The notes: generated from the sequence alone by a model not told the origin. A stretch of DNA of 62,674 nt, filler included, from Basidiobolus meristosporus CBS 931.73 (GCA_002104905.1; 3 parts of 3 records of this genome joined end to end with filler, not necessarily neighbours in it), one strand, 5' to 3'. Counted from the whole stretch's first letter, positions 37,788 to 61,519 are shown. Numbers and translations are program-made.

Positions 37788-37795
37788 TAAATGGC

Positions 37796-37850: not shown

Positions 37851-37860
37851 TTAACGAAGA

Positions 37861-40825: not shown

Positions 40826-41276
40826 ATTAAAATTGATGGATGATTGTATGGAGGCGTATTGAATCGATTCGGCACAATCTGCGTTATTTATCTGATTTTT
40901 AACACATTATGGTTAAATCTCCATCAATTGCCATGTATCCCATCATTATGTTGCAAAAATCATCCGCAAACAATGCCCTGGTACTTTTATTGATGCTTTA
41001 ATCATAGGTCTATAATTAAATAGGAAATCTGCAATTGATGTGATCTGATCCGTGTCAACGCGATCCAAGATGCATCATGCATAATATATGGAAAATTCAA
41101 CAATCACCTTAGTTTTCATATATATTTCATATAAGACCAGGTTGATGCCAATATACTGCTGTATAAGTATCCAAATCCGTAGCTATGGTCCCCATACCAA
41201 ACCTCAACTCATCTTTAGTACAACCCAGACAAAACCCATCCCCAGCTCACAAGTGCGGTCCGGACCGGAAAAGTCG

Positions 41277-42440
41277 ATGTCGGATCCATTTGAGTTCTTG
41301 CCAAATGATTTTAGTATGGCCCAAGTGTCTATGATGAGCCTTCATACAGATATTTGGGCACTACTGATTAATCTAGCAGAACTAGATACCTCAGAGAGTC
41401 GACAAAGATGGAAGAATTTGAGTAGAAAGCTGTGGCATGAGTTCTACATCAAGATGCCAGCTGATGTATGTAAAAAGATATATTACAAGACAAGTATTGA
41501 AATCAAGAATGAGCTGAGAGTGAGGGGATTTGACGAGGAAGCTGCACGGGAACGATTTTGCGCGCAATTTGCACAGTACGGGCCGGACGCGTCTGTTCAT
41601 GCCTCAACTTTGGGAACCAAAGAGAATTTGAATGAGTTTTTGCCTCAAATGACTAATGTACTACGTGATATATTAGTAGAGCTAAGTGGCTTCCAAGAGC
41701 AATATACACAGGACTCATCCAGGCAACAGCTCCAAAGTATCAGACAGAGGGTAAGTGAATACCTTGAGGAATCAGATGGTGAGCTTCAGGAGGAAGAATA
41801 CAGACCGCAAGCAACATTGTCCAGATTGCGCCAGCACGCCTTGCTGGATTCCCTACCATCTCTGGCAGCCACAGCGCGCCAGCACACGTCAGTCCAAACC
41901 ACGCCAACACCCTTTACCAGAACGCCCCGCGTTGAGTCAACGCGCATTGAGTCAACGTGCGCGCTTCAGAGCAAAACTACCAGAACTTGCCAAACTGCTC
42001 ATTTAGACACAAGTCCATTGGAGCGGACCGAGTTGCGTCAACATGCGGCATCACATCAAACTCAGCCAAGGGCCATCTCAACGCGTCAAGGCGCGCCTGC
42101 GCGTGCCGTTTTGCCTGACCATCAGCGAGTTACTTCTGGTGAACTGACTGATGATGACCAACATGAAGTGACTCAACCACCGGAGCCCTTGGCAAGTAAA
42201 AGAACGCGTCAGCGCGTGGCACTACAGGCCGGTTCAGTTAGTTCAGTTGGTTCAGTCGGAGCGATTCAGAGCGGCCAAGCTGCAGCATCGCACTCATCAA
42301 CTAGGAGGCAAAATACTGACTACAAATACACAAGTAGCCAAGATGATAGTCAGCCAGGAAGTAGTATAGGTGTGCAAAGTGAGTCACTACCAAATGCTTC
42401 AGTAGTAATCCCTGTGAGAAAAAAACCCAGGAGAAGATGA
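41277..42440 (+). CDS. Harbinger ORF2, putative Myb/SANT/MADF-like DNA-binding protein with a disordered C-terminus and NLS, open frame
   Basis: DIWALLINLAELDTSESRQRWKNLSRKL resembles MADF helices 2-3 (W..I......C..RWKNLR); C-terminal RKKPRRR. An upstream in-frame ATG exists at 41088. Confidence 0.65.
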   Translation: MSDPFEFLPNDFSMAQVSMMSLHTDIWALLINLAELDTSESRQRWKNLSRKLWHEFYIKMPADVCKKIYYKTSIEIKNELRVRGFDEEAARERFCAQFAQYGPDASVHASTLGTKENLNEFLPQMTNVLRDILVELSGFQEQYTQDSSRQQLQSIRQRVSEYLEESDGELQEEEYRPQATLSRLRQHALLDSLPSLAATARQHTSVQTTPTPFTRTPRVESTRIESTCALQSKTTRTCQTAHLDTSPLERTELRQHAASHQTQPRAISTRQGAPARAVLPDHQRVTSGELTDDDQHEVTQPPEPLASKRTRQRVALQAGSVSSVGSVGAIQSGQAAASHSSTRRQNTDYKYTSSQDDSQPGSSIGVQSESLPNASVVIPVRKKPRRR

Positions 42441-43321
42441 TGTGATCGCTTTGAATTGCTCACATTTGTAATGATCCCAACAACCCTTTTTTTGCAATCC
42501 AAATCAAGCCATTGCAAATCAGTGATCATCAAATTTTTGATATAAGTAATATCAAGGTTGTCTCACATTTGAGACAGAACCCCTATAAATAAACACCCTG
42601 CATATATATACGTCATCTGTAATACCAGTGCAGCTATTGGATCTGTTTCGCACCTACACAATTGCTTGCGTGCTAGCTATGACACCTTGCCCAATCACCA
42701 GGATCAGGGATTTACTTGCTCAATGGGCAAAATGGGATATTTGACGGCAAATCAGGTAGCTTTTTCAGTAGTCAATGAGCCAATTGGGGGCTGCCAGCTT
42801 CAGGATACTTTTGGACCAATTAACCACTGAGATACCGTCCAATTGGAGTGAGGGTAACCAAAATGGTAAGTATCAGTGTAGTTTATAGTGTGATACACAT
42901 TTATTTCCATTTACATTAAAGAAACATATCCAAATACCGGATTTTACCTGCCATTATAGCAGTATCCAATCGCGCACGTGATGCAAGCATTACGAGTTGG
43001 CACGATCATCTGCGCCAACCTCATTGTGTCAGATTGTGCCATAGTGTGCGAGATTGTCCCGCATGGTGCAAAATTGTCCAAGAACAATCCTGCCTTCTGG
43101 TAGCTATAATATCGCGCCCAATTGTTCTTTGCAACCGCGGATTGCGCCGCGCGCCCTGGCACAGTACAATGGAACAAGTCTAAAGTCCTATCCCCCCTTA
43201 AGTATTCCTTAGTCTGATACACACAGGTCTTGAATAAGTAGCCTTGCTTTGGAAATCCGCCTTGCCTTGTTGATCCACACCTAAGTCCTTTCCTGGTCCT
43301 GCCTTGTGTCTATTCATAACA

Positions 43322-46300
43322 CCAATGATATACCTAAGACCTTTTAAAGGCAGTCCAACCTGTTGTGCAACTACTGCAAAAGGAAAGGACACACATCAGA
43401 CTGGTACTTCAAAAAGAGAGAAAGTCAGCTGAAATAGCCTAAACATAGGTATACTGCAACAACCAAAGATAAACTATTCATATCTACACCAAATATGACC
43501 ACAAGCAAGGATTCTCAGACATGGTATATACACTCTGGAACAACTCAATACTTTACAACCAAAAGATTTCTCTACCCAATATTAAAAAATTCCAATTGAG
43601 AAGACTTTTATAGCTGACAATAGAGCACATGATGCAGTGGGACAAGGAAATATCCAAGTAAACCTTAGGAGCAGTGAAGGAAGCCATACTCTTACCTTCA
43701 AAGAACTACTCTATTTACCAGAAATAGCCAAGAACCTACTATCTGTAAGCAAGGCCTCAGCAGAAGGACTCCATTTCAACTTTGACAATTCTGGAAGCAG
43801 GATCACTAATCAAAATGTAGCTCTTATCTCTTCAGGTAGCAGAGATCCAAATCTGTATAAAATGACTTATTTCCATCATATCTAGAAATCAATACAAGTA
43901 ACTCAAATGAAGAAACACTAATACTTTGGCACAGGAGATTTGGACACATCAATTTTGATTATTTACACAAAATGATCAAAGATCAGCCAATTTCTGGAGT
44001 AAAATTTGTTCCCTAGCTGATTTGGAGCACTATGAAGCTTGCATATATGGGAAACATGTCAGACAACCATTCAAGAGCTCCAGTTCAATTAAGACTAGGA
44101 AACAATTTAATCTACTCACTTAGATCTGTGTGGACTTGTGCAAAATTTATCCCTAAGTAGGATGAAGTGTTTAATCACTGTTATTGATGATTATACAAGA
44201 TACATGTGGGTCTATTTCACTGAGAGTAAGAAAGAAGCTCTGTCAAAGCTAAGGGTGCTTAAAGTTGTGGCAGAGAGAGAAACTAGTGAAAAAATCAAGA
44301 AAATACTCTCTGACAATGATGGAGAATATACCTCAGAACACTTCATCCACTTCTGCAAAACTCATGTGACAAGGCAAGAGACTACTGTGCCATACTCCCC
44401 ACAGTAAAACAGAGTAGCAGGACATGCAAGCGGATCAAAAGTTGATAAGGCAAGATCCTGAGTCCATGCTCTTAAGTTATTGTATAATTTTGGGAGGAAT
44501 CAGATGCCACAGCTGTAAACCTGAAAAATAGGGGTTATAGCAGAATACTTTGTGAATCTACTCCATTTGAAACATGGTATGGATACAGACCAAGTGCAGT
44601 ATATTTAAGAATACTTGGATGCATAGCTCATGCAAACATACTTCTCAGAAATCAGTCAAATTTCAAGCCAAAATGTGTAAAAAGAACATTTTTGGCCTAC
44701 TGCAAAGAGATTAAAGCATACAAAGTTTAAAATATTGAGGCAAAGAAGCTGATCAAGTTCAGGAACTTCTTATTTGATGAAAATTCATGATGTTGACAGA
44801 AAATGACATCAAATGATGACAAAAATCTGATCTTAAGTCCACTAGTTGTTAGGATTGAATCAGAGCAAAACAATGAAAGTCTTTTCACTCCAAAGGACCC
44901 TACAACCATGGTTCAGCCTGAAGCAGTGCTCAGGAATATCCCAGAAGTGATTATTCTGGCATCAAATGCCCAAAGATCCAATCAAACAAGAAATAGCTCA
45001 TGCTATTTTATCAGTGGGGGTACAAACTTAGCCTATGCCTATTCAGTCCATATTGATGAGCCCCAGACTGTAAGAGAGGCCCTAAATAGCCCTCAGGCAA
45101 TGTTTTGGAGATCTGCAATGATTTAGGAATATTAGGCCCTTATGGAAAATCAAACTTGGGACTTAGTCAAATTCCAACTCAACCAAAAATCAATTGATTG
45201 CCCAAGGGTCTTTAAGACAAAATACAAGGCCAATAGTACAAGTGAGAGATGCAATGCAAGACTTGTGGCCAAAGGATACTCTCAAACAAAAGGACTTGAT
45301 AATACTGAGACCTTTGCACCAGTAGCTACAATTAATTCCATCAGATTAACATTGGCTATCGCAGCCAAATATTAGTTTTGTATACATCTAATGGATGTAA
45401 ACTGCATTTTTGAATGGACAACTGGATGAGAATGTGTATATGAACCAGCATGATGGGTTTGCTGACCAAGATTACCCCCATTTGGTGTGCAAGCTTAAAA
45501 AGTCTCTATATGGACTCAAACAATCATTAAGAGCCTGGAGTTGCAAAAAAGATTTTTATTTGGAACCTTTGAGTTTGAAATGAAGTAATGCTGACTATAG
45601 TACATACTATAGGCCAGATAGAACAAGCCCAGCTCTATTAGCTCTATATGTGGATGATCTTATTATAGTCACCAATAACCTAGAAATACTGCAGAGACTA
45701 AATCCAGCCTATCCCTTGGGTAAAGATGTCCAATCTAGGAGAACTCATTTATTGCTTAGGGATAAGTTCTCTATACACAGAAGTACCCAGACTATCACCC
45801 TAGCCCAGTCCAAATATATTCAAGATATACTAAAGAAGTACCAAATAGATGAATGTAAACTGGCTGCTACCCCAGTAGAGACAAACCTTAACTTGGTCAA
45901 AACTCAACCAAATCAAGAGAGCTTAGTGCCATCTGAAAGCCCTGACTTATCTTAGCAATCTATGATTGGCAGGCTGATGTATATCATGCTTGGAACACAC
46001 TCAGATATCTCTCATTCAGTGGGAGTTGTTAGCCAGCATGATCAGAACAATGGATCTGATCATATTGCTGCAGTTAGTAGATTTTCAAATACCTAAAAGA
46101 AACTGCTGATATCTGCTTAAGTTACACTTATAAGGATTCAGAACAGGGTTGTGTGGGGTTCTCTGATGCTGATTGGGGACAAACCTAGAAGACATATGAT
46201 CCACCAAAGGAAACACCTTTCTTTACTGTAAAGGAACAATTTCATAGAATTCAAGAAAGCAACCAACCGTAGTACTTTCTACCACAGAGGCAGAGTATAT

Positions 46301-46633
46301 AGCAGCCTGTGAAGCTATAAAAGAAGCAATGTGGATAAGGAAGCTTTTTAAAGATCTAGGCCTATGTCACAAAATGCCTATTACTTTATTTCAAGATAAT
46401 CAAGGATGTATACAATTAGGTAGAAATCCTTCTTTTAATGCTGGAACTAAGCACATAGATATTAGACATCATTTCATATGTGGAGCTTTAGAGAACAACT
46501 TAGTTAACTTAGCTTACTGTCTTACAGATCAAATGATTGCAGACATATTCACCAAACCACTAGCTATAGACAAGTCTGCATATCTTAGGTCAAAATTAGG
46601 ACTAGCCAGTATAAGCACTTTGCTGAGTGGAGG
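43322..46633 (+). mobile_element. Degenerate Ty1/Copia: gag knuckle, protease, integrase, RT, RNase H
   Basis: CNYCKRKGH, WYIHSG, IDDYTRYMWVYF, LSDNDGEYTS, ARLVAKGYSQ, LYVDDL, STTEAEY, TKHIDIRHHF, MIADIFTKPL; many stops. Confidence 0.9.
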
Positions 46634-46882
46634 TGTTGTAAAAATTTGTGATTCCAGCTAAATACTAACCTAACTTAGTCACTTATATCACAGACACTAA
46701 GCACATATATATTAGATATTGTATCATATGTGAAGCTATGGAGAATAACCTTGTAAACCAAGCTTACTCTCCTACAGATTAAATGCTTGTAGATATATTT
46801 ACTGAAGCATTAGTTAGAGATAAATAGATTAACTTTGGTCACAGTTAGAACTAGTCCATATGTGCATATAGCTGAGTAGTAG

Positions 46883-47231
46883 TGTTGTAAAAATTTGTAA
46901 TTCCACTTATATATTCACCTTATGTAGACACTTAGATCATCACCTTCAAATCCTAGAGAATACTAACCAAAATGCTTGTTGGGATTTACTTAAAATATTT
47001 TCATCAAAATATCAGGTACCCAGAGCATGAAAATTCTCAAAGTTGTCCAAACAGCCCCAAACTCTGCACACATGCTCTTAGGACCTTTTTAAACCTATTC
47101 TACTTGCTTATTATGCCAAGACCATGCAAAAGTATAAATACTACTTTTACATTCAATTAATCATTAAGTGAAATACACATAATCTACTTGCTCTCCCAAT
47201 CACTTCCAGCATATCCAAGACTCTTACAACA
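46883..47231 (+). repeat. Copia 3' LTR (349 bp), preceded by a ~249-bp tandem duplicate of RNaseH end/PPT/LTR start
   Basis: TGTTGTAA at 46634 and 46883; TTACAACA end; homologous to 2175-2522. Confidence 0.75.
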
Positions 47232-50200
47232 CAAATGGGGTAGGAGAGCATAACAAGCCAGCTCACAGGAGCTTTGACAGCCACAGAAGATTCAATCAGA
47301 AACCATACCAATGGATATAGATGTAATATGGTAGTACTTAACATAGGTGGAATGCTGGAAGCATATGTTTTGCCTCTACTTTTTGTAGAAAGGGCCCTTG
47401 CTAGATACTGTGCTCCATAGACAGAGAGTTGGCAACTGACCAGCAGCCTTAGTCTCACTGTCAGAGCAACCCCCTTGAAATAGGAAAATGACTTGTACCA
47501 AGACACATATCTTGTATTGAAATTAATATAGAGAAACAGCCCTGATGCATTGCAACTGACAGCAGCTATTGTGTTCTGATGATCCCCCAACTTGGGCAAC
47601 AGCTAACATCATATTAGCCACAGGCACTTTATACATCATTAGCTTGGGACAGCTTGCTCAAAAGCTGGAATTAGCACTTGCATCTTCATATATGATCACA
47701 AAAGTATCAGAAGCCATCAGAGACAAAGAGGCAAGTTTGTACAGCAAGAACTAACATTGCAGGGAGCCCCAAGCAGGAAGCACAAAAATACCATCAAGTG
47801 GAAAGAGTGCCAGAAAGCAACATGCCAATAGCAGTCCTAGCATAACCAGACCTATACAAAGAAACATGTATAACAGGATGCAAGATTCATCCTGTCTAAG
47901 TGGCAGTCTTGGTTCTGATACTGTCAAAGATAAAAGAAACGGTAAATGCTCAGAGGGGCAAGACAATTACTGAAGCTTGCAAATGTGTGCATTGGTGCTA
48001 TGCTTTGCAACCTGGGTATCTGGCGTTTTGGTCAAGTAGAGTATGCAAATCACAACCAGTAGTTTGGCCAGAATACTCCAGGATTTGCTGCCCCATGAGA
48101 AATCTCCAACTTGGAGCTATCTGATAATCTTCAAACATTTTGCTGCTTCTCCATAGGCATTTTTGCAGGCATTCTGCTGGTGCTTTTCCTTCCTATTTGG
48201 CTCCAATACCTGGTGGATATAGTCAGCAGCTGATTGCCAAATTTGGTATGAGCTCCAGTTGATTTTGTGTCCTAAAGTAAGATATATCTGCTTGTCTGCC
48301 AAATGGCTAGTCCAGGATATGCCCAAAGTTGTCAGCTTTGAGAAAGCTGGAACTCAGGTGATATCATGATGGTAGGCTACTAGCCTTTTGTTAGGCTTTT
48401 TCTCTTTGGGTTCACTATGATCTGAGCAACTATTTATGTCTATTTTCAGCTGATATCACAAAATCTGTCAAATATCATGACCAATCTAAGAGAGCTAACC
48501 TACTACTTGGAGAATCAGTTCTCTTTAGACTAAAGTAGCTCCTTGATCACTTCAAGCCAGTCCAAGGATGAATATGATATACTCAATGAGGAATAGCCTG
48601 GTCTTGTTGGTAGATCTAATCCAGATGAAGCATTCATATCATGTATTACAGCCTTAATAATGTGAGCAACAAGGAATTCCTAACTTTATAATGGAGTAGT
48701 TGGAGCATTTTGGTAGTGTTATGCAGACTAGACAGCTTAATATAGCATAAACCTAATAGTGTTTTGACAGCCTTATTGCAAGGTTTTGATGGTAACAATG
48801 ATTCTATTACAGCCTACATTTCTTTAATAGAGCCCAACCTGCCAGTACATTGGATTGCCATTTATGATAGATATTAGAAGTTATGCAGGGCATCATTTGA
48901 TGTGCCCAGCTTTATCATCAAGTTAGACTAAGCCCACATAGAGAGCCATAAACCAGGTAGATTATTCTGTGACTAATTAATATCCTACTCTAAGAAAGCT
49001 TTACAGTGAGTGGTCCTCATGGTTTAACATCATCTGGAGAAACCCTGTATTGCTAGCAATCATCAGGACTCCACCAGTTTGGGGGATTAATAATGGCCTG
49101 CCAAACTATTAGTTGTTGAATGAATATTTAGTTTGCCTGTGACAAAATGGATAACAAAGAATGGTGAGTTGATCAAGTATCAGCTACATTGTTCAATTAC
49201 TATTTAACAATCTTTGATATACTGAATTTGTTATACCTACATAGTAGCCTTGCACTGTTAAGTGGATGACAGTGAGAGCACAATATACTGGTCAACTTTT
49301 ACCTTATCATTGAAATATACCTAATCTTTAGATGGATATTGATATGTGCATGATTTGGCTTAGTATCCCCCAAGAAAAAAATAGATAACAGGCCAGCAGA
49401 TTACCATCATAATATCAGCTGAATTCCTGCCTTCTCAAAACTGGCAACTCTCCAAAACTCAGGTTCTGGCTTTTAGGCAGACTAGCAGACATATTTCCCA
49501 TGAGGAGACAAGGCCAATTATCATTCATACCAAACATGGTGATCAGCTGCTCACTACTCCCACCAAAAATTGCAACTGAAAATCAGAATGGAAAACACCA
49601 GCTGAGCTTCAGGCAAAAATCAGATGATTTTCAAGGGTGAGATTTTTCATAGGGATTGGTTGTATATTGGCTAAAAGCATGGGCTTTTACCCCCCCCCCA
49701 AACACTACCCAGTGCATAGAGCTATACTTGCCTAGTTGCAGATATTTTGGTAATTAGCCTGAGATTCATTGATTATGGGAAGGTGGGGACTTGGCAAACC
49801 TCAAAAATATTGCTGTAGATATTTGTATGTCCACCAGTCATATCACATTGAGGAAGAAATTTTAGGGGCTTCTTTGGCGGCCATAATGGTTGGTGACGCA
49901 ACTGGGGGGCATATCAAAGCCGGGACATCCGTAGCTCAAAAACACATCCTAAAGTAAGCCAGATTATCTTTGAAAAGCTCAAGATAGCCCTGTATATTGA
50001 GCCAACAACTCAACGAAAATACTCTATGACAGTATACCAAGCCATTCAAAGATCTGGATGTCTGGATGCGACCGATGAAATCTCCTACAATCCATGCCCT
50101 AGCGCACGCAGAGGGGAAATATTGACCTGTAGCAACCTACCCTCTGTACATCGGAATCCAATGATGGGATCCCATGATCTCCGCGTGCTGAAACCAGGTA

Positions 50201-50650
50201 AACCGGAACTCAACGAGGCGCCATCGAGAGTTGGAAGAACACCACATCAGAGGAAGTGAGGGATTCATCGGACGTAATCATTACATGGTGGGAGGGTGAT
50301 GGATTTAACTTTTTTCGGCGTGACACCAGAGTGGTCAGTATGGTGGTCATCCATGATGTCAGTCCATTGGTGGCGGACCCGGAACGGGCAGAATCCAGTT
50401 GGCGATGGCCCGAGGCTAAGACGAAAAAAGCCAGGAAGAGAAGCGGTGATGTCGCACGGCATGATCCATTCGGTAGGGAATCTTGATGGTGTGGGTTGAT
50501 GTGGATGTGTACATCGGTGCGTAGGTGATTTGTTACGGGCGCATATATATACAGGAGATCGGTTTGACGCTTGCCGCTTCCTACATTCCCATCCCTGACC
50601 TGACTGGCCCTCAGTCTCTATCTTGTCCCCCCCCCTTACGCCAAACACCC

Positions 50651-52299
50651 ATGCTAAGCCCGGTGAAGAATTGGTGGAAAAGAGTCGACTTGGACGACTT
50701 ACTTGGGTAGGTTTTGGAACGCAGTGGTTTGGCTCGCACGCCACCCTTGGCACTGGTTAACTCCCATTTTCAGTTACGACACCTTCAAGGTGGTCCACGT
50801 TCGGGACCGGCGGTTAGGCTTCACTTTCCACGGTTTTCAGATCGCCATCTTCGCCTACATCATTTACTCGGTCATACACAACCAGCTTTATCTTAAAAAG
50901 GAGTCCCCGGTTCCAGGTATAGCCTCGCTGGACGGAAACCTTACGCCCCTAGCCAACCCCATTCTACCAAGCTAACGTTGTATTGACCGTGTCTAGGGGC
51001 GATCAGGGTGTCGCTGTTAGAGCCCACCGGTGAACTTCAAACCTCCCCATACTGCCAACAAAAACCGTGCGTCTTCTGGGGAGCGAACCAGATATTGTAT
51101 GTGGAAGAGAGTTGAACGAGGAATTCCCAACCGGACTGATCCCCTTCCATTTAGATATGACCCTGGTGATCAGGGGGCCACTTTTCTGACCACCCGTATC
51201 TCCACCAAAGTGTTCCCAGCCAGAGAGGGGTGCGATTTTCAGCTGCCCACCAATGCCGCCTGCAGATACAATCTACAACCATCCACCGTCTCTCCCGAGT
51301 ACTACATCACGGACCTGGATCGATACACCGTACGCGAACTTCCCTCCATCTTTCTAGTCGCCCCTCGGAACTGATCTTTCCCTCCACACAGCTTATGATC
51401 GAGCATTCAGTTCGCGGCACCGCCACGGGCATCTCCATAAGAAACGGGGAGATGTCTGGCCGACTGCTGATCACGAAGGCCAACAACCCGTATTACCAAA
51501 ACGAGACCGAACTTCACTTCAGCCCCCAAACCCGGCCTCCGAGAGTTCCCGGGGACATCATTACCGTTGGGCAGCTCTTACGTGCCTCAGGAGCCGTACT
51601 GGATGGTAGGTGGAGTCCCCATGGTCGCTAATGGTCCCATTACTCACCGATTCGCACTAGCCCCCTCGGACGCACCAGGTGCGGATCAGTCCAAGGGAGA
51701 AACGTACCGTTCCTCCGGGATCGTGCTCAGCGTGGTGATCGAGTACGACAACGACGGGAGCACGAACTTCAAGTACTCCTACTCAGCGAATTACATCAAG
51801 GGAAACGAGTTCAAGGTCGAGGAAACCATATTCAACCCGACCGATGGATCCATCACCGAACTAAACCGACACGGGTAAGCGCGGTCCAGTCAGACCCACC
51901 TTCCACCACCCTGATCCTCACCCAACCTCCTGTAGGATCCGGATCGTCTTTTCGCAGACGGGGAACATCGGGAAGTTCGACTTCATGTCCCTGCTGACGA
52001 ACCTGGTGGCCTCGATAGCGCTCCTCAAGACGGCCACCTTGCTGGTGGAGATATTCATGCTGAAGTTCCTACCGCAGCGGAAGATGTACTACGAGGCGAA
52101 GTACGAGCTTACCGAGGATTTCGACGACCTTCGTAAACGTCGGAATGGAGAGGATATCGATTTGGAGGGTCGGAAAAAACCCACCACCCTTGGACCTGGT
52201 GTCGAGGTCACCCAGCCCTCACCATGCCACACCCACTTCTCGGCGGAGCCCCTGGTCGAGCATAGAGATGACCACGTGGGCCCATCCAAAGCTGTGTGA
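50651..52299 (+). CDS. P2X purinoceptor-like ion channel, Dictyostelium/algal type (7 exons: 50651-50706, 50774-50916, 50997-51096, 51155-51329, 51392-51605, 51661-51874, 51936-52299; 421 aa)
   Basis: N-terminal YDTFKVVHVRDRRLG (YxTxK), TM1, Cys-bearing ectodomain, RHGIRIVFSQTGNIGKFDF, TM2, LPQRKMYYEAKY (YxxxK); all six introns are GT-AG and keep the frame. Confidence 0.9.
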
Positions 52300-52689
52300 A
52301 GGAACGAGGAACCCGAGAAATTTTGACAATCATAATAACCCCACCCCAACCATGTATTCCGCACCTTAGAACCAGAATCCCTCCGAATAAATACCTCTTT
52401 GACCCCTATCTACGTCGTTCTCACCTTTTAGTACACCACCTGGTTCAACCGGATGATCCGGTAAAGATAGCAGTGCTGTTGAGGTGCCAGGAGGATTTCA
52501 TAAGTAGGCAGCGGACCAGGCCCTTTACCCCTCGTCCCCTATCCAATCCTCATACGATACCATGTACATACAATGGGAATATATTAATTGGAATAGCATG
52601 TTTATTGGTATACATCTTTGCGATCCATTGGAATGATTCAATCGGAGGCAGTACCAACAAATTACAATCAACCTATCCGGTGGCATGAC

Positions 52690-54219
52690 TCACTGCGCCC
52701 TCTTCAAGCAGATGTTCACATCGGCCTTGATGAGGCCAAGCACCTTGGCGCGTGCGACAATGTCATCGCACGACCACTTATCGGCGTCTCCCTTGGACCA
52801 GTCACTGGCTCCCTTCACCCCAAGGCAGACGTTCGCGCGGATTTTGAGTCCGAGGATGTTCAGGCGAGCCACGATGTCGTTGCACTCGTCGGAGTCGCTG
52901 TCCTCGTCACCACCTAGTCTTCCACCGCGGAGGGTGTTCTTGAGGCAAATGTTGACGTCGGCCTTGATGAGACCAAGCACCTTGGCGCGTGCAACAATGT
53001 CATCGCACGACCACTTATCGGCATCTCCCTTGGACCAGTCACTGGCTCCCTTCACCCCAAGGCAGACATTGGCATCCACTTTGAGACCAAGCAGGCGGAG
53101 GCGAACCACGATGTCATCGCACTCGTTGTGTTCTCCATCGCCGCCACTTGGCCGTCCACCGCCGAGGACGTTCTTCAAGCAGATGTTGACGTCGGCCTTG
53201 ATGAGACCAAGCACCTTGGCGCGTGCAACAATGTCATCGCACGACCACTTGTCGGCATCTCCCTTGGACCAGCCACTGGCTCCCTTGATTCCAAGGCAGA
53301 CGTTGGCGTCCACTTTGAGTCCAAGCAGGCGAAGACGAGCCACAATATCTTCACATTCATCGTAGTCTCCGTCACTGCCGCTGCTTGGCTGCACACCACC
53401 AAGGACATTCTTCAGGCAGACATTGACATCAGCCTTGATCAGGCCAAGCACCTTGGCGCGTGCAACAATGTCATCGCATGACCAGTTGTCGGCATCTCCC
53501 TTGGACCAGCCCCTGGCTCCCTTGATTCCGAGGCAGACATTGGCGTCCACCTTGAGCCCAAGTAGGCGCAGGCGGGCCACGATATCGTCACACTCATTGT
53601 AGTCGCCATTATCGCCACCGTGACCATTCTCTGGAAGGATTGACACCAAGCCATCGTTGCTACCTAGTATCGGACCAAGACACACCTTGGCGTCAACCTT
53701 GATCCCAAGAAGGCGACCAACGCGGACAAGATCCTCGCATGACCACTTGGAGTAATCGTCGTCATCATCGTGCCCGCTGCTCAGCACCCCCTTCTCTATC
53801 TTCCTTCCGAGGCACACGTTCACGTTCGCCCGGACCTTCAGCAACTTGAGTCTGGCCACGATGCCGCGACATCTGCGCTCACTCTCCTCCTCGTCGTAAT
53901 CATCGCCACGTTTCTTCAATCCTCCAATACACACATTCGCGTCGACCTTCACCCCGAGGGCCCGAACTTTGGCCACCAAGGCATCACACAACAGATCAGC
54001 TGGATCGTACAGATCTGCCTCGTCGCTACCCCCATCTCCACCGGGACGACCCTCGCACAGGTCGAGCCCGAGGTTCGCGTGGTAACGGGTATTCAGATGG
54101 GATAACAAATCCTGGCAGTAATTCAATCCACCTGGGGGGACGTATCCTCTCTCCACGACCAAGCTGGATGCAAGAAGCGCACTGGACAGAACTAACAAAA
54201 GGCAGTTGGCGGAGAACAT
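52690..54219 (-). CDS. Secreted Cys-module repeat protein A (509 aa, 12 C-x18/19-C modules); family not recognised
   Basis: Signal peptide MFSANCLLLVLSSALLASS; four ~79-aa double-module repeats; intronless. Confidence 0.85.
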   Translation of the reverse strand: MFSANCLLLVLSSALLASSLVVERGYVPPGGLNYCQDLLSHLNTRYHANLGLDLCEGRPGGDGGSDEADLYDPADLLCDALVAKVRALGVKVDANVCIGGLKKRGDDYDEEESERRCRGIVARLKLLKVRANVNVCLGRKIEKGVLSSGHDDDDDYSKWSCEDLVRVGRLLGIKVDAKVCLGPILGSNDGLVSILPENGHGGDNGDYNECDDIVARLRLLGLKVDANVCLGIKGARGWSKGDADNWSCDDIVARAKVLGLIKADVNVCLKNVLGGVQPSSGSDGDYDECEDIVARLRLLGLKVDANVCLGIKGASGWSKGDADKWSCDDIVARAKVLGLIKADVNICLKNVLGGGRPSGGDGEHNECDDIVVRLRLLGLKVDANVCLGVKGASDWSKGDADKWSCDDIVARAKVLGLIKADVNICLKNTLRGGRLGGDEDSDSDECNDIVARLNILGLKIRANVCLGVKGASDWSKGDADKWSCDDIVARAKVLGLIKADVNICLKRAQ

Positions 54220-56600
54220 TTTGCACAAGTCTATCGTCTAAGGCAGAGGCGGAGGCGGAGGAGGGGGAGGAGGATACGCTTGGTTGTTGTGTGAGGAATG
54301 AACCACCAGATGGCCGCGTTTTATACCGGACCCATCAGGCAACACCGCCCCTTAGCGCCGCGTCCAACATGACTCTAGATAATACCCGATTGGAATGCGG
54401 AGAAGCACCGATATGGTCTAGTAGAAATGAAATAATCGCCGTTCATTATGTAGCGTACTTACAATGGAAAGGCTTCTCATTCATCACTAAAGTGACTTGC
54501 ATCATATAGATGGGATTCGTTCCAACTCCCCGAGGTCCACACTAATGCACTGCGCTAGGGCACATCGGTACAAATGGAGGGATGCATACTCCACCGGTAA
54601 TAGGGGAAAATCAAGATCCCCATTATCCAGACTATTGCCATCTCCCTCATGATCATGGCGGCGGTGTACAGCAGTTGGAAAGCTTCGTGAGATTCTTCAT
54701 CATGAACCCAACGTGACCCCGTCCCTAATTCACCATATGCATCACCTCGCATCCCACCACCAACCGATGCGCTTCATTTCTAACCAGCTGGATTCCCCGC
54801 CGACTGGCACGGTTTGGGAGCTTGGGGACGGTCACACCAGGGGGATGCGTCAAGTGGCATTATCGGGGCTATGAATTCCCTCTGCATAAGTGTACAGCGG
54901 GCAATAAGCATTGAGCCGAGTCTGGTCTAATGCAAGATCCATTGGAAGCCCACATTTGGCTTCGTCCGGTGATGATCAGGGAGGTGCGTGGGTGTGTCGG
55001 CCATACCGGAAAGCCAATGGCCCATCTGAAACCCCGATGGTGGTTAGGATAATGGTTGGGTGATAATGGTAAATTAAAGCAAGGGGATACGCCACATTGG
55101 ACAATTAGTCTCTCTTTTCTGCTAGACCATATCGGTGCTTCTCCGCATTCCAATCGGGTATTATCTAGAGTCATGTTGGACGCGGCGCTAAGGGGCGGTG
55201 TTGCCTGATGGGTCCGGTATAAAACGCGGCCATCTGGTGGTTCATTCCTCACACAACAACCAAGCGTATCCTCCTCCCCCTCCTCCGCCTCCGCCTCTGC
55301 CTTAGACGATAGACTTGTGCAAAATGTTCTCCGCCAACTGCCTTTTGTTAGTTCTGTCCAGTGCGCTTCTTGCATCCAGCTTGGTCGTGGAGAGAGGATA
55401 CGTCCCCCCAGGTGGATTGAATTACTGCCAGGATTTGTTATCCCATCTGAATACCCGTTACCACGCGAACCTCGGGCTCGACCTGTGCGAGGGTCGTCCC
55501 GGTGGAGATGGGGGTAGCGACGAGGCAGATCTGTACGATCCAGCTGATCTGTTGTGTGATGCCTTGGTGGCCAAAGTTCGGGCCCTCGGGGTGAAGGTCG
55601 ACGCGAATGTGTGTATTGGAGGATTGAAGAAACGTGGTGATGATTACGACGAGGAGGAGAGTGAGCGCAGATGTCGCGGCATCGTGGCCAGACTCAAGTT
55701 GCTGAAGGTCCGGGCGAACGCGAACGTATGCCTCGGGAAGAAGTTGGAAAAGGGCGTGCTGAGTAACGGGCACGACGATGACGACGATTATTCCAAGTGG
55801 TCATGCGAGGATCTTGTCCGCGTTGGTCGCCTTCTTGGGATCAAGGTTGACGCCAAGGTGTGTCTTGGTCCGATACTAGGTAGCAACGATGGCTTGGTGT
55901 CAATCCTTCCAGAGAATGGTCACGGTGGCGATAATGGTGACTACAATGAGTGTGACGATATCGTGGCCCGCCTGCGCCTACTTGGGCTCAAGGTGGACGC
56001 CAATGTCTGCCTCGGAATCAAGGGAGCCAGGGGCTGGTCCAAGGGAGATGCCGACAAGTGGTCATGCGATGACATTGTTGCACGCGCCAAGGTGCTTGGC
56101 CTGATCAAGGCCGATGTCAACGTCTGCCTGAAGAATGTCCTCGGTGGTGTGCAGCCAAGCAGCGGCAGTGACGGAGACTACGATGAATGTGAAGATATTG
56201 TGGCTCGTCTTCGCCTGCTTGGACTCAAAGTGGACGCCAACGTCTGCCTTGGAATCAAGGGAGCCAGTGGCTGGTCCAAGGGAGATGCCGACAAGTGGTC
56301 GTGCGATGACATTGTTGCACGCGCCAAGGTGCTTGGTCTCATCAAGGCCGACGTCAACATCTGCTTGAAGAACGTCCTCGGCGGTGGACGGCCAAGTGGC
56401 AGCGATGGAGAACACAACGAGTGCGATGACATCGTGGTTCGTCTCCGCCTGCTTGGTCTCAAAGTGGATGCCAATGTCTGCCTTGGGGTGAAGGGAGCCA
56501 GTGACTGGTCCAAGGGAGATGCTGACAAGTGGTCGTGCGATGACATTGTTGCACGCGCCAAGGTGCTTGGTCTCATCAAGGCCGACGTCAACATCTGCTT
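52700..56600. repeat. Large inverted repeat (arms ~52700-54421 and ~55121-56600, spacer ~700 bp)
   Basis: Promoter, 5' UTR and coding sequence are mirror images; identical ORFs appear on both strands in the ORF track. Confidence 0.9.
55217..55223 (+). promoter_or_regulatory. Putative TATA box of secreted protein B (mirror copy at ~54320 for protein A)
   Basis: GTATAAAA about 105 nt upstream of ATG 55324. Confidence 0.45.
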
Positions 56601-57072
56601 GAAGAATGTCATCGGTGGTGGCCGGCCAGTTGGTGGTAATGATGGAGAGCACAGCGAGTGCGATGACATTATAGTACGCCTTCGACTTCTTGGACTGAAG
56701 GTAGATGCCAACGTCTGTCTCGGAATCAAGGGAGCCGGAGATTGGAGCAAGTCACGTATCGAGAACTCCAAATGTGAGGACATCGTCTCACATGCCAAAG
56801 TGCTCGGGATCATCAAGGCTGATGTAAACGTGTGCCTAAACAACGCCAGCCGCCCAGACCAAATTGCCGAACACTTCAACGAATGTGATACCATCGTGGC
56901 CAGACTTCGCGTACTCGGTATCCCTGTCGCCGCCAACATCTGCCTCAACATCAAGGTCGACGGCAAGCTCACCAAAGAGGAGATCGACAACATGAAGTGC
57001 GAGGAGATCACCGCTCACGCCAAAGCCCTTCACATCCTGAAGGCGGATGTCGAGGTGTGCCTTGTAAAATAG
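55324..57072 (+). CDS. Secreted Cys-module repeat protein B (582 aa, 14 modules)
   Basis: Same signal peptide as A; 28 mature Cys in 14 regularly spaced pairs; one KKR dibasic site. Confidence 0.85.
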   Translation: MFSANCLLLVLSSALLASSLVVERGYVPPGGLNYCQDLLSHLNTRYHANLGLDLCEGRPGGDGGSDEADLYDPADLLCDALVAKVRALGVKVDANVCIGGLKKRGDDYDEEESERRCRGIVARLKLLKVRANANVCLGKKLEKGVLSNGHDDDDDYSKWSCEDLVRVGRLLGIKVDAKVCLGPILGSNDGLVSILPENGHGGDNGDYNECDDIVARLRLLGLKVDANVCLGIKGARGWSKGDADKWSCDDIVARAKVLGLIKADVNVCLKNVLGGVQPSSGSDGDYDECEDIVARLRLLGLKVDANVCLGIKGASGWSKGDADKWSCDDIVARAKVLGLIKADVNICLKNVLGGGRPSGSDGEHNECDDIVVRLRLLGLKVDANVCLGVKGASDWSKGDADKWSCDDIVARAKVLGLIKADVNICLKNVIGGGRPVGGNDGEHSECDDIIVRLRLLGLKVDANVCLGIKGAGDWSKSRIENSKCEDIVSHAKVLGIIKADVNVCLNNASRPDQIAEHFNECDTIVARLRVLGIPVAANICLNIKVDGKLTKEEIDNMKCEEITAHAKALHILKADVEVCLVK

Positions 57073-57639
57073 ATGGGCCACCCAGCGCCCAGTCGATATC
57101 CTCCCTGGAAGGAAGCATATTCAGGGAGGGAGCAGGAATGTTTGCGATATAGCGAAACAATTTTACCACCTTCTTGTGATTTTGATTTTACTCGAATAGA
57201 ACTTTCAAACTCATAAGATACCATACCAATAAAGGGCGAAGTTATCGTACACGAAGTGCCGCACCATCTCTTCATCCTAACCATACTCCCAAGGTGGCTT
57301 TTGTTATGTGGAATCTTGATAACCATATACGTTGAGGCTATGGAGGGCTTAGGTTCCAATGTGATGGCCATTCCTGTCTGTGCAGTGCTACAGGTATCAT
57401 CGATGGGGACTGTGAAACGAGAGAGCCCTGATGTGTCTTTCATGAAAGTGGTTTATTTTTGGTACTTCCTACGAATCCATGAAAAGAGATGGGGGAAAAT
57501 CCGAGGGAGAGTATGCATGATGAAGATGATGTGAAGTGAATGTCATGAAGCGGAGCAATGTTTGAAGCGGAATTTACAGTGGATATGTTTCATTAAGCGT
57601 TGGAAAATCAGTACCTAAACATTCTCCTGGGTTTGATGC

Positions 57640-60128
57640 TTAGTTGTTAGCTTCAGCCATCTTGTTCAATGCAGAACCGGCCTTGAACCACTCGATTTGG
57701 TTCTCGTTGAAGGTGTGGTTGACGGGGATCTCGATCTTCTCGCCGGACTCGCGGGTGACGCGAAGGGTCAATGGCTTGCCGGGGGTGAAGGTGGTGAGAC
57801 CGACGATGGACACCTTGTCGGAGGGCTTGATCTTCTCGTAGTCAGCGGGGTCAGCGAAGGTCAAGGGAAGAACACCTTGCTTCTTCAAGTTGGTCTCGTG
57901 AATACGAGCGAAGGACTTGGTAATGACGGCGATACCACCCAAGTGACGAACTTCGAGGGCGGCGTGCTCGCGGGAAGAACCTTCACCGTAGTTCTCGTCA
58001 CCGACGACGACCCAGCTGATGCCCTTGGCCTTGTAGTCTCTGGCAACGGCGGGAACGGCTCCGAATTCACCGGTCAAGACGTTCTTGATGTTGTTGGCTT
58101 CTCCGTTCTCGGAGTTAATGGCACCGATCAACATGTTGTTAGAGATGTTGTCCAAGTGACCACGGTACTTGAGCCAGGGACCGGCCATAGAGATGTGATC
58201 AGTGGTGCACTTGCCCTTGACCTTGATCAAGACGGGAAGATCTTCGGCGTCCTGGCCGTTCCACTTGGCGAAAGGCTCAAGGATTTGAAGTCTGTTACTC
58301 TCGGGGGATACCTCAACCTTGACGGTGGAGCGGTCCTCAGGGGGGGCTTGGTAGGTGTTCTCACCAGCGTCGTAACCGCGAGGGGGAAGTTCGGCACCGT
58401 GGGGAGGAGTGAACTTGAACTTCTTGCCGTCGGCGCCAGTAAGCTCATCAGTGATGGGGTTGAAGCAAAGGTCACCGGCGAAGGACATGGCAGTGACGAG
58501 CTCAGGGGAAGCAACGAAAGCGTGGGTGGCAGGGTTACCGTCGTTACGTCCGGTGAAGTTTCTGTTGTAGGAGGTGATGATGGAGTTCTTGTCACCCTTC
58601 TTGATGTCTTGACGATCCCATTGACCGATGCAAGGACCGCAGGCGTTGGCGAGAACGACACCACCGGCCTTGTCGAAGACCTCCATTTGTCCGTCACGCT
58701 CGATGGTGGCACGGATTTGCTCGGAACCAGGGGTGATGGTGAACTTGGACTTGACTTGGAGTCCGTGGTCAAGAGCCTCTTGGGCAAGGGAGGCGGAGCG
58801 GGACATATCTTCATAGGAAGAGTTGGTGCAGGAGCCGATGAGACCGACCTTCAATTCACTGGGCCAGTTGTTCTTCTTGACGGTTTCGGCGAACTTGCTC
58901 AAGGGAGTGGCAAGATCGGGAGTGAAGGGTCCGTTGATGTGTGGCTCCAATTCGGAAAGGTTGATCTCGATGACGTGATCGTATTTGGCACCCTCATCAG
59001 CACGGAGGTTGTGGGCGAACTCCTCAGAAGACTTGGCGATGTGAGGACGGCTGGTGGCACGGAGGTAGTCACCCATACGCTTGTTGAAGGGGAACACGGA
59101 GGTAGTGGCACCGATTTCGGCACCCATGTTACAGATGGTAGCCATACCAGTGCAAGACAAGCTCTCAACACCAGGGCCGAAGTATTCGACAATAGCACCA
59201 GTTCCTCCCTTGACGGTCAAGATACCAGCAACCTTCAAGATGACATCCTTGGCGGAGGTCCAACCGCTGATTTGGCCGGTGAGCTTAACACCAATGACCT
59301 TGGGGCACTTGAGTTCCCATGGGATGTCGGCCATGACGTCAACAGCATCGGCACCACCAACACCGATAGCGCACATACCCAAACCACCAGCGTTGGGGGT
59401 ATGGGAGTCAGTACCGATCATGAGACCACCGGGGAAAGCATAGTTCTCGAGGATGATTTGATGGATAATGCCGGATCCTGGCTTCCAGAAACCAAGACCG
59501 TACTTGGCGGTGGCGCTGGCCAAGAAGTCGTAGACTTCCTTGTTGATGTCCTTGGCTCTGGCCAAATCCTTGGGGCCACCCAACTGAGCCTCGATCAAGT
59601 GATCGCAGTGAACGGTGGAGGGGACGGCAACTGTGGGAAGACCAGCGGAGATGAATTGAAGAAGAGCCATTTGGGCGGTGGCATCTTGGCAAGCAACACG
59701 ATCAGGTCTGAGCTTGAGGTAGGAGGAACCACGCTCGATGTCTTGGTTCTTGGCATCGTCCAAGTGACCGTAGATAATCTTCTCAGCAAGAGTAAGGGGA
59801 TGGTTCAAACTGTAGAGCAACCGTTAGTACGAATGTAGCAGGGATCCAGTTCAACCAGGGTACTTACCGATCTCTGATGATGGCCAAGTTGTCCTCAATT
59901 CTTTGGTAGTTGATGTACTTGTCCTTCTCCAAGTTGGAGATGGACACCTTTTGAGGAGCAACACCACCGGTAGCGGTAGCTAAGCCTCTGGCAGAGACTG
60001 CCTTGCGTACAATAGGAGAGAAGTTCTACAGGAGAAGAATCGGCGGTGGTTAGACTCGGGGGGTATGCAACAGAGAGGAGGCATTGAATTGAACATACTC
60101 TAGAAGCACGACTGAAAGTAGACATCAT
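57640..60128 (-). CDS. ACO1: Mitochondrial aconitase (exons 60128-60099, 60025-59868, 59809-57640; 785 aa)
   Basis: Presequence [28 protein letters not shown]; [53 protein letters not shown]. Confidence 0.97.
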
Positions 60129-61519
60129 CTTCGTTGGATGATGAAAGAGAAGCAGACAGGGTTGTCGGAAATGAGTGTGGGGTGTGGCTATTTGTAGGTT
60201 TTTCGAGATGCTTTCGTTCCACCAATCAGCAGATCGTTGGAAAAATTTTAAATCCTCATTATCTATGGATAAGACCGATTGATACCCGGGTAAAATAGCA
60301 TCAACTCAACCATCGTCACGCGGCACGGTAACGTCGCTCTAAAGAGCAGATAAACCTGATTGTCAACATACGTACTACAATACCCAATGGCATATTTCTG
60401 GTGTGAATGCACAGGGATTCTGCCGTCCGTGGCTACAGGATTGTCATTCCACTGAGCCAGTTGTGATTAACTTGTGCGCCCCGAAGGTCAGCTGCAGCAG
60501 GTATATTATTCACCTTCAAATTCGGGTCATTTAGCGAGGTGGTGTCTGGCAAGTGAATGCACGTGCTGACGAAAACGAAATTTCGATTACTTAATAGCCA
60601 GTGTTGACACACACCTCAAAACGGAAGGGGTTAAGAAAAATTAGCACTTAACCCCTTCCTATTCGGATGCTGGAGCAGCGAGCCAATCAACAGCCTCCAA
60701 ACCGGATGCCCATTTCCATCAAAATGCTCTGTTTCTCCGCGCCTTAATAGGTTAAATATATATTGTATCCAGAGTCACAGGATGGTAATACCTAACGAAT
60801 CCTAGTGGCTTTGAGCATTCCCCTCCCCCAAAACCACGCCACCTTCCCCCAGAAAATTCTGCTTGCATTATTTTCCACTCACCCACCCATGCTTGCTTTC
60901 ATGCCCGCTAGGCCAGCGCCGAAAGTCTGGTAGAGAGTAGTGAAGTGTGTCGGATGTGACGTACCGTTATTTGATGATTTCCATTTGGCACTGTGAGAAT
61001 GGATGCTCGGATAAATTCGTCTGACACTTATTTCATCGGTGCCCCATAAATTTCACTACATTACGTCGGGATATGGTCTCGGGCTTCTAATTTGACAGCT
61101 CATTTATTGAGGCCCAACTGTCAAATCTGTCACCGTAATCGGCTTTCCATTTGGTTTGACCACATTATTCGCTTTCCGAGACTCGGCTTTCGTTCTTTTC
61201 TATGCGCCGATTCTACGTCGACCGATGTTGGGCTTTCCTCTGCTCCTTAGTGGTTGGTACCACTAGGATACTCTGTTGAGCCCTCTTTCGGTAGTGTAAC
61301 ATGTAGTTGCTTTATTGGATACTGTTGAGCCCGAATTCGCTTTCTCTGTCCTTTTGTTCGGCTAAATCAATTGCGCTTAGCCTCCATTTATTTTTTACCA
61401 ACCGCGACCGTAGGAAGATTCATGGAATTACGTATTTCTGTATCATTGTGCGTATCTTTATTCAGGGTGTTTATCTTTATCCAAGGTATGCTAGCTATAC
61501 ACCGGTAACTCGGGCATCT

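What the first reader, a model, noticed from the sequence alone, without database searches (positions are those of the whole stretch)
50651..52299. Fungal P2X-type channel that appears to lack both ATP-binding lysines
Seen: a complete 421-aa two-TM channel reconstructed from 7 exons, invisible as a single ORF. Established: P2X receptors occur in animals, Dictyostelium, green algae and some early-diverging fungi but are absent from yeasts and most Dikarya. From my recollection of the Dictyostelium P2XA sequence, its ATP-sensitivity lysines lie in RTSLKGP and YKRHGIR. The matching segments here are RVSLLEP and LNRHGIR (K to L and K to N), and the TM2 Asp is Glu (VEIF). Inference: low ATP affinity, a different ligand, or a modulatory subunit, possibly organellar.
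Basis: partly seen in the sequence, partly recalled or inferred. Interest (0 to 1): 0.7.

Follow-up and report, generated by a model that had tools for sequence, protein, structure and literature searches.

The report
Basidiobolus P2X channel gene, Dictyostelium type
This is a real, intact, already annotated P2X-family ion-channel gene of the early-diverging fungus Basidiobolus meristosporus, and its missing "ATP lysines" are the normal state of fungal P2X proteins rather than a peculiarity of this gene.

Summary
Seven GT-AG exons at 50651-52299 (+) give a 421-aa protein. It is identical to the public protein K493DRAFT_412410 of Basidiobolus meristosporus CBS 931.73, which UniRef names "P2X purinoceptor". 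It passes Pfam PF00864 at 63.5 bits. Its AlphaFold model matches only solved P2X receptors (Z 16.8).

Leu74 sits where Dictyostelium P2XA has Lys67 and human P2X1 has Lys70. Asn298 sits where human P2X4 has Lys313 (P2X1 Lys309). The TM2 Asp is Glu339.

These features are not special to this gene. In 33 fungal homologues, 20 have no Lys or Arg at either position and none has Lys at both. Asn at 298 and Glu in TM2 are the majority residues of the alignment.

There is published precedent. Dictyostelium P2XE lacks both lysines and is still ATP-gated and ATP-selective (EC50 about 0.5 mM). Dictyostelium-type ("Branch 1") P2X receptors are already described as lacking vertebrate ATP residues.

The gene is under strong purifying selection (dN/dS about 0.04 against B. 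ranarum, all six intron positions shared).

It is most likely a low-affinity ATP-gated trimeric cation channel, possibly organellar. This is untested: I found no functional study of a fungal P2X. Novelty is low.

The parts
50651..50706 (+). Exon 1: start codon and cytosolic N-terminus (codons 1-18 plus 2 nt)
   Evidence: The product is identical to P0161. The B. ranarum orthologue has its first intron at the same CDS position, 56.
50774..50916 (+). Exon 2: YxTxK motif (Y20-T22-K24, 50775-50789) and TM1 (residues 31-54, 50808-50879)
   Evidence: Pfam PF00864 matches this exon alone at E 2e-06. The AF2 model has helix 31-54. Y20, T22 and K24 are conserved in 41-43 of 46 sequences.
50997..51096 (+). 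Exon 3: first ectodomain strand with R70 (51005-51007), S72 (51011-51013) and L74 (51017-51019), plus conserved C86 and C91
   Evidence: L74 aligns with Dictyostelium K67 and with human P2X4 K69 / P2X1 K70. S72 aligns with P2X4 K67 / P2X1 K68. R70 is conserved in 42 of 46 sequences.
51155..51329 (+). Exon 4: ectodomain with conserved C126 and C136 and the start of the YTLMIEHS strand (T158)
   Evidence: A weak profile alignment places YTLMIEHS against vertebrate FTLLVKNN (about 1 bit). T158 is conserved in 43 of 46 sequences.
51392..51605 (+). Exon 5: mid ectodomain, including the single N-glycosylation sequon N195-E-T
   Evidence: AF2 pLDDT is mostly above 90 here.
51661..51874 (+). Exon 6: invariant R246; E279-F280-K281 (51807-51815), the equivalent of the vertebrate NFR motif; N298-R299-H300 (51864-51872)
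   Evidence: The profile aligns E-[YF]-K with human P2X1 N290-F291-R292. N298 aligns with human P2X4 K313.
51936..52299 (+). Exon 7: GIR strand, TM2 (residues 317-345, 51982-52068) with E339 (52048-52050), YxxxK motif (Y352-K356, 52087-52101), poorly conserved low-confidence C-terminal tail, and the TGA stop
   Evidence: Pfam PF00864 matches at E 1.2e-08. phmmer finds human P2X4 and P2X1 chains. AF2 has helix 317-345, and pLDDT is below 50 after about residue 384.

Best explanation
The locus is the intact, conserved P2X-family gene of Basidiobolus meristosporus (K493DRAFT_412410).

Shown:
- It belongs to the Dictyostelium-type ("Branch 1") P2X lineage.
- In the named homologues this lineage is found in early-diverging fungi, and the gene tree groups them broadly by fungal lineage.
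- It has the P2X fold: two TM helices, a large Cys-bearing ectodomain, an N-terminal YxTxK motif, a C-terminal YxxxK motif and an acidic TM2 residue.
- It is under strong purifying selection.

Inferred:
- It assembles as a trimeric cation channel whose ectodomain faces an oxidising compartment, either extracellular or organelle lumen.
- It is gated by ATP at high micromolar to millimolar concentration, like Dictyostelium P2XB and P2XE.
- The ligand pocket does not use the vertebrate lysine clamp. It instead draws on family-conserved residues in the same pocket-forming strands: R70, T158/H163, E279/K281 and R299/H300, plus invariant R246.

The absence of Lys at positions 74 and 298 is a lineage-wide trait, not a loss specific to this gene.
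For: - Identity to P0161, and the record name.
- Pfam PF00864 at 63.5 bits.
- AF2 model with pLDDT 85.3. All top Foldseek and VIA hits are P2X receptors: probability 1.00, Z 16.8, rmsd 4.3 A over 263 residues.
- End-to-end 48% identity to the Syncephalis homologue.
- Tree: the window protein and its B. ranarum orthologue sit inside the clade of terrestrial early-diverging fungi, with chytrid and blastoclad sequences outside it.
- ML dN/dS of 0.044, with 75% of 4-fold sites changed, and all six intron positions shared with B. ranarum.
- Conserved residues: R70 42/46, R246 46/46, K281 41/46, R299 40/46, H300 41/46, T158 43/46, H163 44/46, C86 and C91 invariant and C126 and C136 at 90% or more.
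- Twenty of 33 fungal homologues lack a basic residue at both lysine positions.
- Literature: dP2XE lacks both lysines yet is ATP-gated with EC50 511 uM, is ATP-selective and sits on the contractile vacuole (PMC2787382). [quoted passage not shown]
Against: - I found no functional study of a fungal P2X.
- Of the vertebrate polar ATP contacts, only Thr (T158, weak alignment) and a basic residue at the NFR position (K281) are kept. Two positions become acidic: E279 for Asn, and E162 for Lys190 on a weak alignment.
- I had no model coordinates and no trimer model, so whether R70, R246, R299 or H300 actually line the pocket is an inference from strand register.
- No RNA run could be listed, so expression is not shown.
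- Localisation is unknown.
Confidence: 0.6

Rival explanations
1. The fungal clade, this gene included, has a chemically remodelled pocket and is gated by something other than free ATP. Candidates are a metal-nucleotide complex, another nucleotide or polyphosphate, or protons acting through the conserved histidines.
For: Family-wide replacement of K68, K70, N290 and K309 (human P2X1 numbering) by S/T, a variable residue, E and N. Conserved E162/D, H163, E279 and H300 in the pocket-forming strands. No fungal P2X has been assayed.
Against: Dictyostelium receptors with equally poor matches to the vertebrate pocket are highly ATP-selective. The family keeps several conserved Arg/Lys residues. Nothing here points to any alternative ligand.
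Confidence: 0.22
2. The protein is a modulatory or obligate heteromeric subunit. It works only together with the second Basidiobolus paralogue (K493DRAFT_361585, P0099), which carries Lys at the 298-equivalent position.
For: Both Basidiobolus species keep two paralogues from a lineage-specific duplication. The second copy has K at the 298-equivalent. P2X ATP sites lie between subunits (IUPHAR review PMC8199792). Ludlow et al. mention a dominant-negative effect involving dP2XC/D on ATP-gated currents.
Against: The window copy is the slow-evolving, family-typical one. The paralogue is the divergent one: branch length 1.42, Q at R70, V-Y-G in place of E-Y-K, Asn in place of the TM2 acidic residue, and Pfam only 25 bits for P0099. 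Most of the named fungal species appear here with a single homologue, and 20 of the 33 fungal sequences share the same lack of a basic residue at both lysine positions.
Confidence: 0.12
3. The gene is a decaying relic or a gene-model artefact with no channel function.
For: No expression data could be obtained. The classical ATP residues are absent.
Against: The frame is intact and all introns are canonical. All intron positions are conserved with B. ranarum. dN/dS is 0.044 with saturated synonymous sites. Family-invariant residues are retained. The AF2 model is confident.
Confidence: 0.03

Closest known systems
Dictyostelium discoideum P2XA-E (intracellular, contractile-vacuole P2X receptors; 'Branch 1' P2XR)
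   Same: Same family and the same branch-type features: no vertebrate 10-Cys pattern, S/T at the K68-equivalent, the GxxRxSL strand, the RHG(I/V)R motif, and the YxTxK and YxxxK motifs. Like dP2XE, it lacks both lysines whose mutation abolished ATP-evoked currents in dP2XA.
   Different: - About 32% identity to the D. dimigraforme P2XA-like protein.
- This protein has E-F-K where the Dictyostelium sequence has I-Y-D, and Glu in place of the TM2 Asp.
- Function and localisation are untested here. Basidiobolus is a walled filamentous fungus and, from general knowledge, has no contractile vacuole.
Vertebrate P2X1-7 (solved structures, e.g. human P2X4 9bqh, human P2X1 9xqr, human P2X3 5svk, zebrafish P2X4 4dw1)
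   Same: Same fold (Z 15-17). Recognisable TM1, TM2, GIR-strand and G-x-G-K-F motifs. An acidic TM2 residue. The YxxxK motif.
   Different: - 13-19% identity.
- ATP contacts K68, K70, N290 and K309 (P2X1 numbering) are S72, L74, E279 and N298. Only R292 is kept, conservatively, as K281.
- Four conserved ectodomain Cys instead of ten.
P2X homologues of 'basal fungi' (Cai 2012: Allomyces macrogynus, Spizellomyces punctatus, Batrachochytrium dendrobatidis)
   Same: Same fungal clade. The Allomyces protein (P0026, UniRef 'P2X purinoceptor') is 40% identical and also has Q and N at the two lysine positions.
   Different: The window gene comes from Basidiobolomycota, a lineage not named in the passages I read about that report. 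The Cai paper itself was not held, so I know it only through citing papers.
Ostreococcus tauri OtP2X
   Same: A cloned P2X receptor from a unicellular eukaryote with low ATP potency (EC50 about 250 uM).
   Different: OtP2X keeps the lysines equivalent to rat P2X2 K69 and K308 and lacks the YxxxK motif. The window protein is the reverse on both counts.

Membership tests
P2X receptor family (Pfam PF00864) | Significant match to the family profile above the curated threshold | tested here: met
   63.5 bits against a cut-off of 27, E 2.3e-17 for the whole protein. The TM1 and TM2 exons each hit separately.
P2X receptor family (Pfam PF00864) | P2X subunit fold: two TM helices flanking a large beta-rich ectodomain | tested here: met
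   AF2 pLDDT 85.3 with helices 31-54 and 317-345. Foldseek's top 50 hits are all P2X at probability 1.00. VIA gives Z 16.8, rmsd 4.3 A, 263 residues aligned.
P2X receptor family (Pfam PF00864) | N-terminal YxTxK/R and C-terminal YxxxK motifs | tested here: met
   Y20-D-T22-F-K24 and Y352-Y-E-A-K356.
P2X receptor family (Pfam PF00864) | Conserved acidic residue in TM2 (Asp in vertebrates and in DdP2XA) | tested here: met
   E339 aligns with the human P2X4 TM2 Asp and with D329 of the Dictyostelium proxy. Glu is the majority residue of the alignment (31 of 46).
P2X receptor family (Pfam PF00864) | Trimeric assembly and ATP-gated cation current | not testable with these tools
   Only a monomer model without coordinates was available, and there is no electrophysiology.
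Vertebrate-type ('Branch 2') P2X receptors | ATP-coordinating K68, K70, R292 and K309 (human P2X1 numbering) plus N290 | tested here: not met
   The equivalents are S72, L74, K281, N298 and E279.
Vertebrate-type ('Branch 2') P2X receptors | Ten conserved ectodomain cysteines | tested here: not met
   Only C86, C91, C126 and C136 lie in the ectodomain. These four are conserved across the fungal and amoebozoan set.
Dictyostelium-type ('Branch 1') P2X receptors (PMC10620158) | [quoted passage not shown] | tested here: met
   Every named homologue I looked up among the representative-search hits is from fungi, Amoebozoa or other protists, and a motif scan found no vertebrate-type sequence among the 165 proteins fetched by then. 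Three of the four residues are absent. Caveat: no Branch 2 sequence was in my tree, so branch assignment rests on hit ranking and motifs, not on a rooted phylogeny.
Dictyostelium-type ('Branch 1') P2X receptors (PMC10620158) | Intracellular (vacuolar) localisation and low-potency ATP gating | not testable with these tools
   Known for Dictyostelium only. No data exist for fungi.

The most novel reading that the evidence does not exclude
Fungal P2X proteins as a clade have swapped the vertebrate lysine clamp for a conserved set of residues: E162, H163, E279, K281, N298, R299 and H300, plus R70 and R246. They might therefore recognise their ligand in a different way. One option is metal-bridged or protonation-dependent ATP binding suited to an acidic organelle lumen. 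Another is a ligand other than ATP. Basidiobolus would be a culturable filamentous fungus in which to test this.
Probability: 0.25. Interest if true: 0.6.

Novelty: new member of a known kind. Interest (0 to 1): 0.25.

Why it matters
P2X receptors are major drug targets, and how they bind ATP is understood almost entirely from animal receptors. The Dictyostelium-type branch, which includes all the fungal homologues seen here, binds ATP without most of the canonical residues, and nobody knows how. No fungal member appears to have been assayed.

This gene does not open that question. It is one more example of a published pattern, and it is already named a P2X purinoceptor in UniRef.

The survey made here does give a concrete residue list for mutagenesis. 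Of 33 fungal sequences, none has both lysines. Conserved R70, R246, K281, R299 and H300 are the candidates to test.

Tried and rejected
- **Exon 6 against solved structures.** Searched alone, it gave only chance hits to GFP-like proteins (E above 0.1). A single 70-aa ectodomain exon is too divergent, so these hits were rejected.
- **The NFK motif at 265-267.** I first took it for the vertebrate NFR motif. The profile alignment and the 17-residue spacing to the K309-equivalent place NFR at E279-F280-K281 instead.
- **Papers not held.** Fountain 2007 (PMC3942652) and Cai 2012 (PMC3286542) could not be read. Their content is cited only through Ludlow 2009, Fountain 2013 and Prole & Taylor 2012.
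- **RNA evidence.** The look-up of sequencing runs listed no RNA run. Splice junctions rest on homology and on conservation in B. ranarum.
- **dN/dS methods.** NG86, LWL85 and YN00 failed because synonymous sites are saturated. The ML estimate is quoted and should be read as "well below 0.1".
- **Vertebrate comparison.** No vertebrate-type P2X was among the fetched proteins, so I ran no profile-profile alignment and built no rooted Branch 1 / Branch 2 tree.
- **Genome contigs.** Not used, because it holds only bacteria and archaea.
- **Pocket geometry.** The structure tool returns no coordinates and only monomers, so pocket distances could not be measured.
- **Joined sequence.** Exons were searched one by one by reference. 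The join was made only inside scripts from window.fa. Whole-protein tools were given P0161, the database record that proved identical to the model.

Full report
**1. Is the thing there?**

Yes. Reading 50300-52700 and joining seven exons in a script gives a 1266-nt open frame of 421 codons plus TGA. The exons are 50651-50706, 50774-50916, 50997-51096, 51155-51329, 51392-51605, 51661-51874 and 51936-52299, all on the + strand.

The six introns are 55-80 nt. All begin with GT and end with AG, and several carry CTAAC- or CTGAT-like branch sites. No single ORF covers the gene; the longest ORF piece is 133 aa.

Pfam P2X_receptor (PF00864) matches the TM1 exon (E 2e-06) and the last exon (E 1.2e-08). 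The last exon alone finds human P2X4 and P2X1 chains in the PDB. Against 1.84 billion representative proteins it gave 409 hits at E up to 0.001.

**2. Whose gene is it?**

The joined model aligns end to end (residues 1-373, 48% identity, E 5e-118) with a Syncephalis fuscata protein.

A search with that protein returned P0161. This is hypothetical protein K493DRAFT_412410 of Basidiobolus meristosporus CBS 931.73. It is 421 aa, lies on a 30360-bp contig (exactly the length of this piece), and is named "P2X purinoceptor" by UniRef.

P0161 is identical to my model. The contig is MCFE01000851.1 of GCA_002104905.1, with the gene at record positions 18337-19985. The gene is therefore already annotated and named.

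From this point the whole protein could be used by reference:
- Pfam PF00864 scores 63.5 bits against a cut-off of 27.
- An AlphaFold2 model built on a 46-sequence alignment has mean pLDDT 85.3. It shows helices 31-54 and 317-345 around a beta-rich ectodomain, and a disordered tail after about residue 384.
- Foldseek's best 50 PDB matches are all P2X receptors, at probability 1.00.
- VIA-align gives Z 16.8, rmsd 4.3 A over 263 residues, to human P2X1.

**3. Are the ATP lysines really missing?**

Yes, and this was tested rather than recalled. Among the hits is P0060 from Dictyostelium dimigraforme (377 aa). Its K67, K288 and D329 match the published D. discoideum P2XA residues K67 and K289.

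Equivalences for the window protein:

| Window residue | Aligned partner | Basis |
|---|---|---|
| L74 | Dictyostelium K67; human P2X4 K69 / P2X1 K70 | MAFFT; family profile |
| S72 | human P2X4 K67 / P2X1 K68 | family profile |
| E279-F280-K281 | human P2X1 N290-F291-R292 | family profile, ungapped; 17 residues to the next site in both proteins |
| N298 | Dictyostelium K288; human P2X4 K313 (P2X1 K309) | MAFFT; phmmer |
| E339 | Dictyostelium D329; human P2X4 TM2 Asp | |
| T158, E162 | vertebrate T186, K190 | weak alignment of about 1 bit, YTLMIEHS against FTLLVKNN |

The L74 equivalence reproduces the one published by Ludlow et al. 2009.

Of the vertebrate polar contacts, only a basic residue at the NFR position (K281) and probably the Thr survive.

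**4. Is that special to this gene?**

No. In the 46-sequence alignment (33 named fungal sequences; the rest are three named protists, namely Dictyostelium, Paradermamoeba and Lithocolla, and ten unnamed sequences) the counts are:
- Position 298: N 28, D 7, E 5, K 3.
- Position 74: Q 18, K 12, L 7, R 6.
- Position 339: E 31, D 13.

Twenty of the 33 fungal sequences have no Lys or Arg at either position. None has Lys at both.

The gene tree groups the fungal sequences broadly by lineage: blastoclads together, chytrids together, and then a well-supported clade of Mucoromycota, Zoopagales and Basidiobolus. Within that picture, Asn298 looks ancestral to the fungal clade. Leu74 is a Basidiobolus-lineage state at a site that changes freely.

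What the family does conserve in the ectodomain:
- R70 (42/46)
- T158 (43/46)
- H163 (44/46)
- R246 (46/46)
- K281 (41/46)
- R299 (40/46)
- H300 (41/46)
- Four cysteines: C86 and C91 invariant, C126 and C136 conserved at 90% or more

Most of these lie in the very strands that build the vertebrate ATP pocket. R70, S72 and L74 are spaced i, i+2, i+4 in a predicted strand (65-74). They should therefore face the same side, which makes R70 a candidate substitute. That is an inference; I had no coordinates.

**5. Is the gene functional?**

The B. ranarum orthologue is P0162, on JASJQH010000565.1. I reconstructed its CDS exactly from its locus. All six introns sit at the same CDS positions: 56, 199, 299, 474, 688 and 902.

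Over codons 1-368 the proteins are 84% identical, while 75% of four-fold sites differ. ML gives dN 0.087, dS 1.97 and dN/dS 0.044. L74, N298 and E339 are shared by both species. This is strong purifying selection and rules out a relic.

No RNA run could be listed, so expression is not shown.

Both Basidiobolus species also keep a second, fast-evolving paralogue (P0099 / P0176) that arose by a lineage-specific duplication. It has K at the 298-equivalent. It has also lost R70, the E-Y-K motif and the acidic TM2 residue.

**6. What is known**

- P2X homologues in "basal fungi" were reported in 2012 (Cai, cited in PMC3853471 and PMC3410928). As of the 2013 review (PMC3853471) their function had not been shown experimentally. 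My searches found no later assay.
- Ludlow et al. 2009 state that dP2XB lacks the first lysine and dP2XE lacks both. Both are nevertheless ATP-gated (EC50 266 and 511 uM), selective for ATP over 17 other nucleotides and nucleosides, insensitive to PPADS and suramin, and located on the contractile vacuole.
- Baines et al. 2013 confirm ATP gating of P2XA, B, D and E under K+ and acidic conditions.
- The 2023 Clytia paper defines a deep "Branch 1" containing Dictyostelium, green algae and fungi. [quoted passage not shown]

**7. Most likely mechanism**

- **Shown:** P2X family membership, P2X fold, selection, and clade-wide pocket chemistry.
- **Inferred, about 0.6:** a homotrimeric cation channel gated by high-micromolar to millimolar ATP through family-specific residues. 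Its Cys-bearing ectodomain, with one N-glycosylation sequon, would face the exterior or an organelle lumen.
- **Rivals:** a non-ATP or metal- or proton-dependent ligand mode for the whole fungal clade (about 0.22); an obligate partner or modulator of the paralogue (about 0.12); a non-functional relic (about 0.03, contradicted by selection).

**8. Verdict**

The gene is a new, uncharacterised member of a known kind, already annotated, with a feature that is typical of its clade and has an ATP-gated precedent. Interest is low to moderate. The open and worthwhile question of how Branch 1 and fungal P2X receptors bind their ligand belongs to the clade, not to this locus.

Noticed in passing
window 35497-37790 (+): Mitochondrial-type DNA on this nuclear scaffold. 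Two cox1 fragments (PF00115; the second at E 2e-83) are separated by a LAGLIDADG homing-endonuclease ORF at 35989-36783. This is either a NUMT or an assembly chimera.
   Followed up: partly
window 37808-39326 (+) and 39944-40591 (-): Ty3/gypsy-type integrase ORFs (zinc-binding, core, SH3 and chromodomain) lie directly after the cox1 fragment. A DDE_Tnp_4 transposase ORF sits on the other strand. The annotation calls no genes in the 10 kb upstream of the P2X gene.
   Followed up: partly
window 32315-50314 versus 50315-62674: There is a sharp compositional break exactly at the P2X gene. The upstream part is about 40% GC and carries transposon-type ORFs; the downstream gene-rich part is about 54% GC.
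   Followed up: no
window 52690-54228 (-) and 55315-57072 (+): A divergently oriented pair of genes that are 92% identical. They encode proteins with signal-peptide-like N-termini and Cys-rich repeats, and match no Pfam family. In B. ranarum the P2X gene has genes of 418 and 653 aa downstream in the same orientations.
   Followed up: partly
window 57640-60125 (-): An aconitase gene (PF00330 / PF00694), called as a 784-aa product in the public annotation.
   Followed up: no
P0099 (B. meristosporus K493DRAFT_361585) and P0176 (B. ranarum): A second, fast-evolving Basidiobolus P2X paralogue. It has K at the 298-equivalent, Q at R70, V-Y-G in place of E-Y-K, and Asn in place of the TM2 acidic residue. 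It could be a regulatory or degenerate subunit.
   Followed up: partly
P0079, P0031, P0046, P0024, P0048, P0047 (P0079 is from Mortierella; the others cluster with it and were not looked up): These P2X homologues are 1000-1700 aa long. The four scanned (P0079, P0031, P0048, P0047) have C-terminal extensions after the channel domain with no Pfam match. This is either a lineage-specific fusion or merged gene models.
   Followed up: partly
NCBI names of P0079, P0020, P0022, P0011: Several fungal P2X homologues (Mortierella, Haplosporangium, Gonapodya, Gaertneriomyces) are named 'cytochrome c oxidase subunit 1' in NCBI. The one scanned here (P0079) matches only PF00864, and the others are listed with PF00864 where precomputed Pfam is shown. 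This looks like a propagated annotation error.
   Followed up: no
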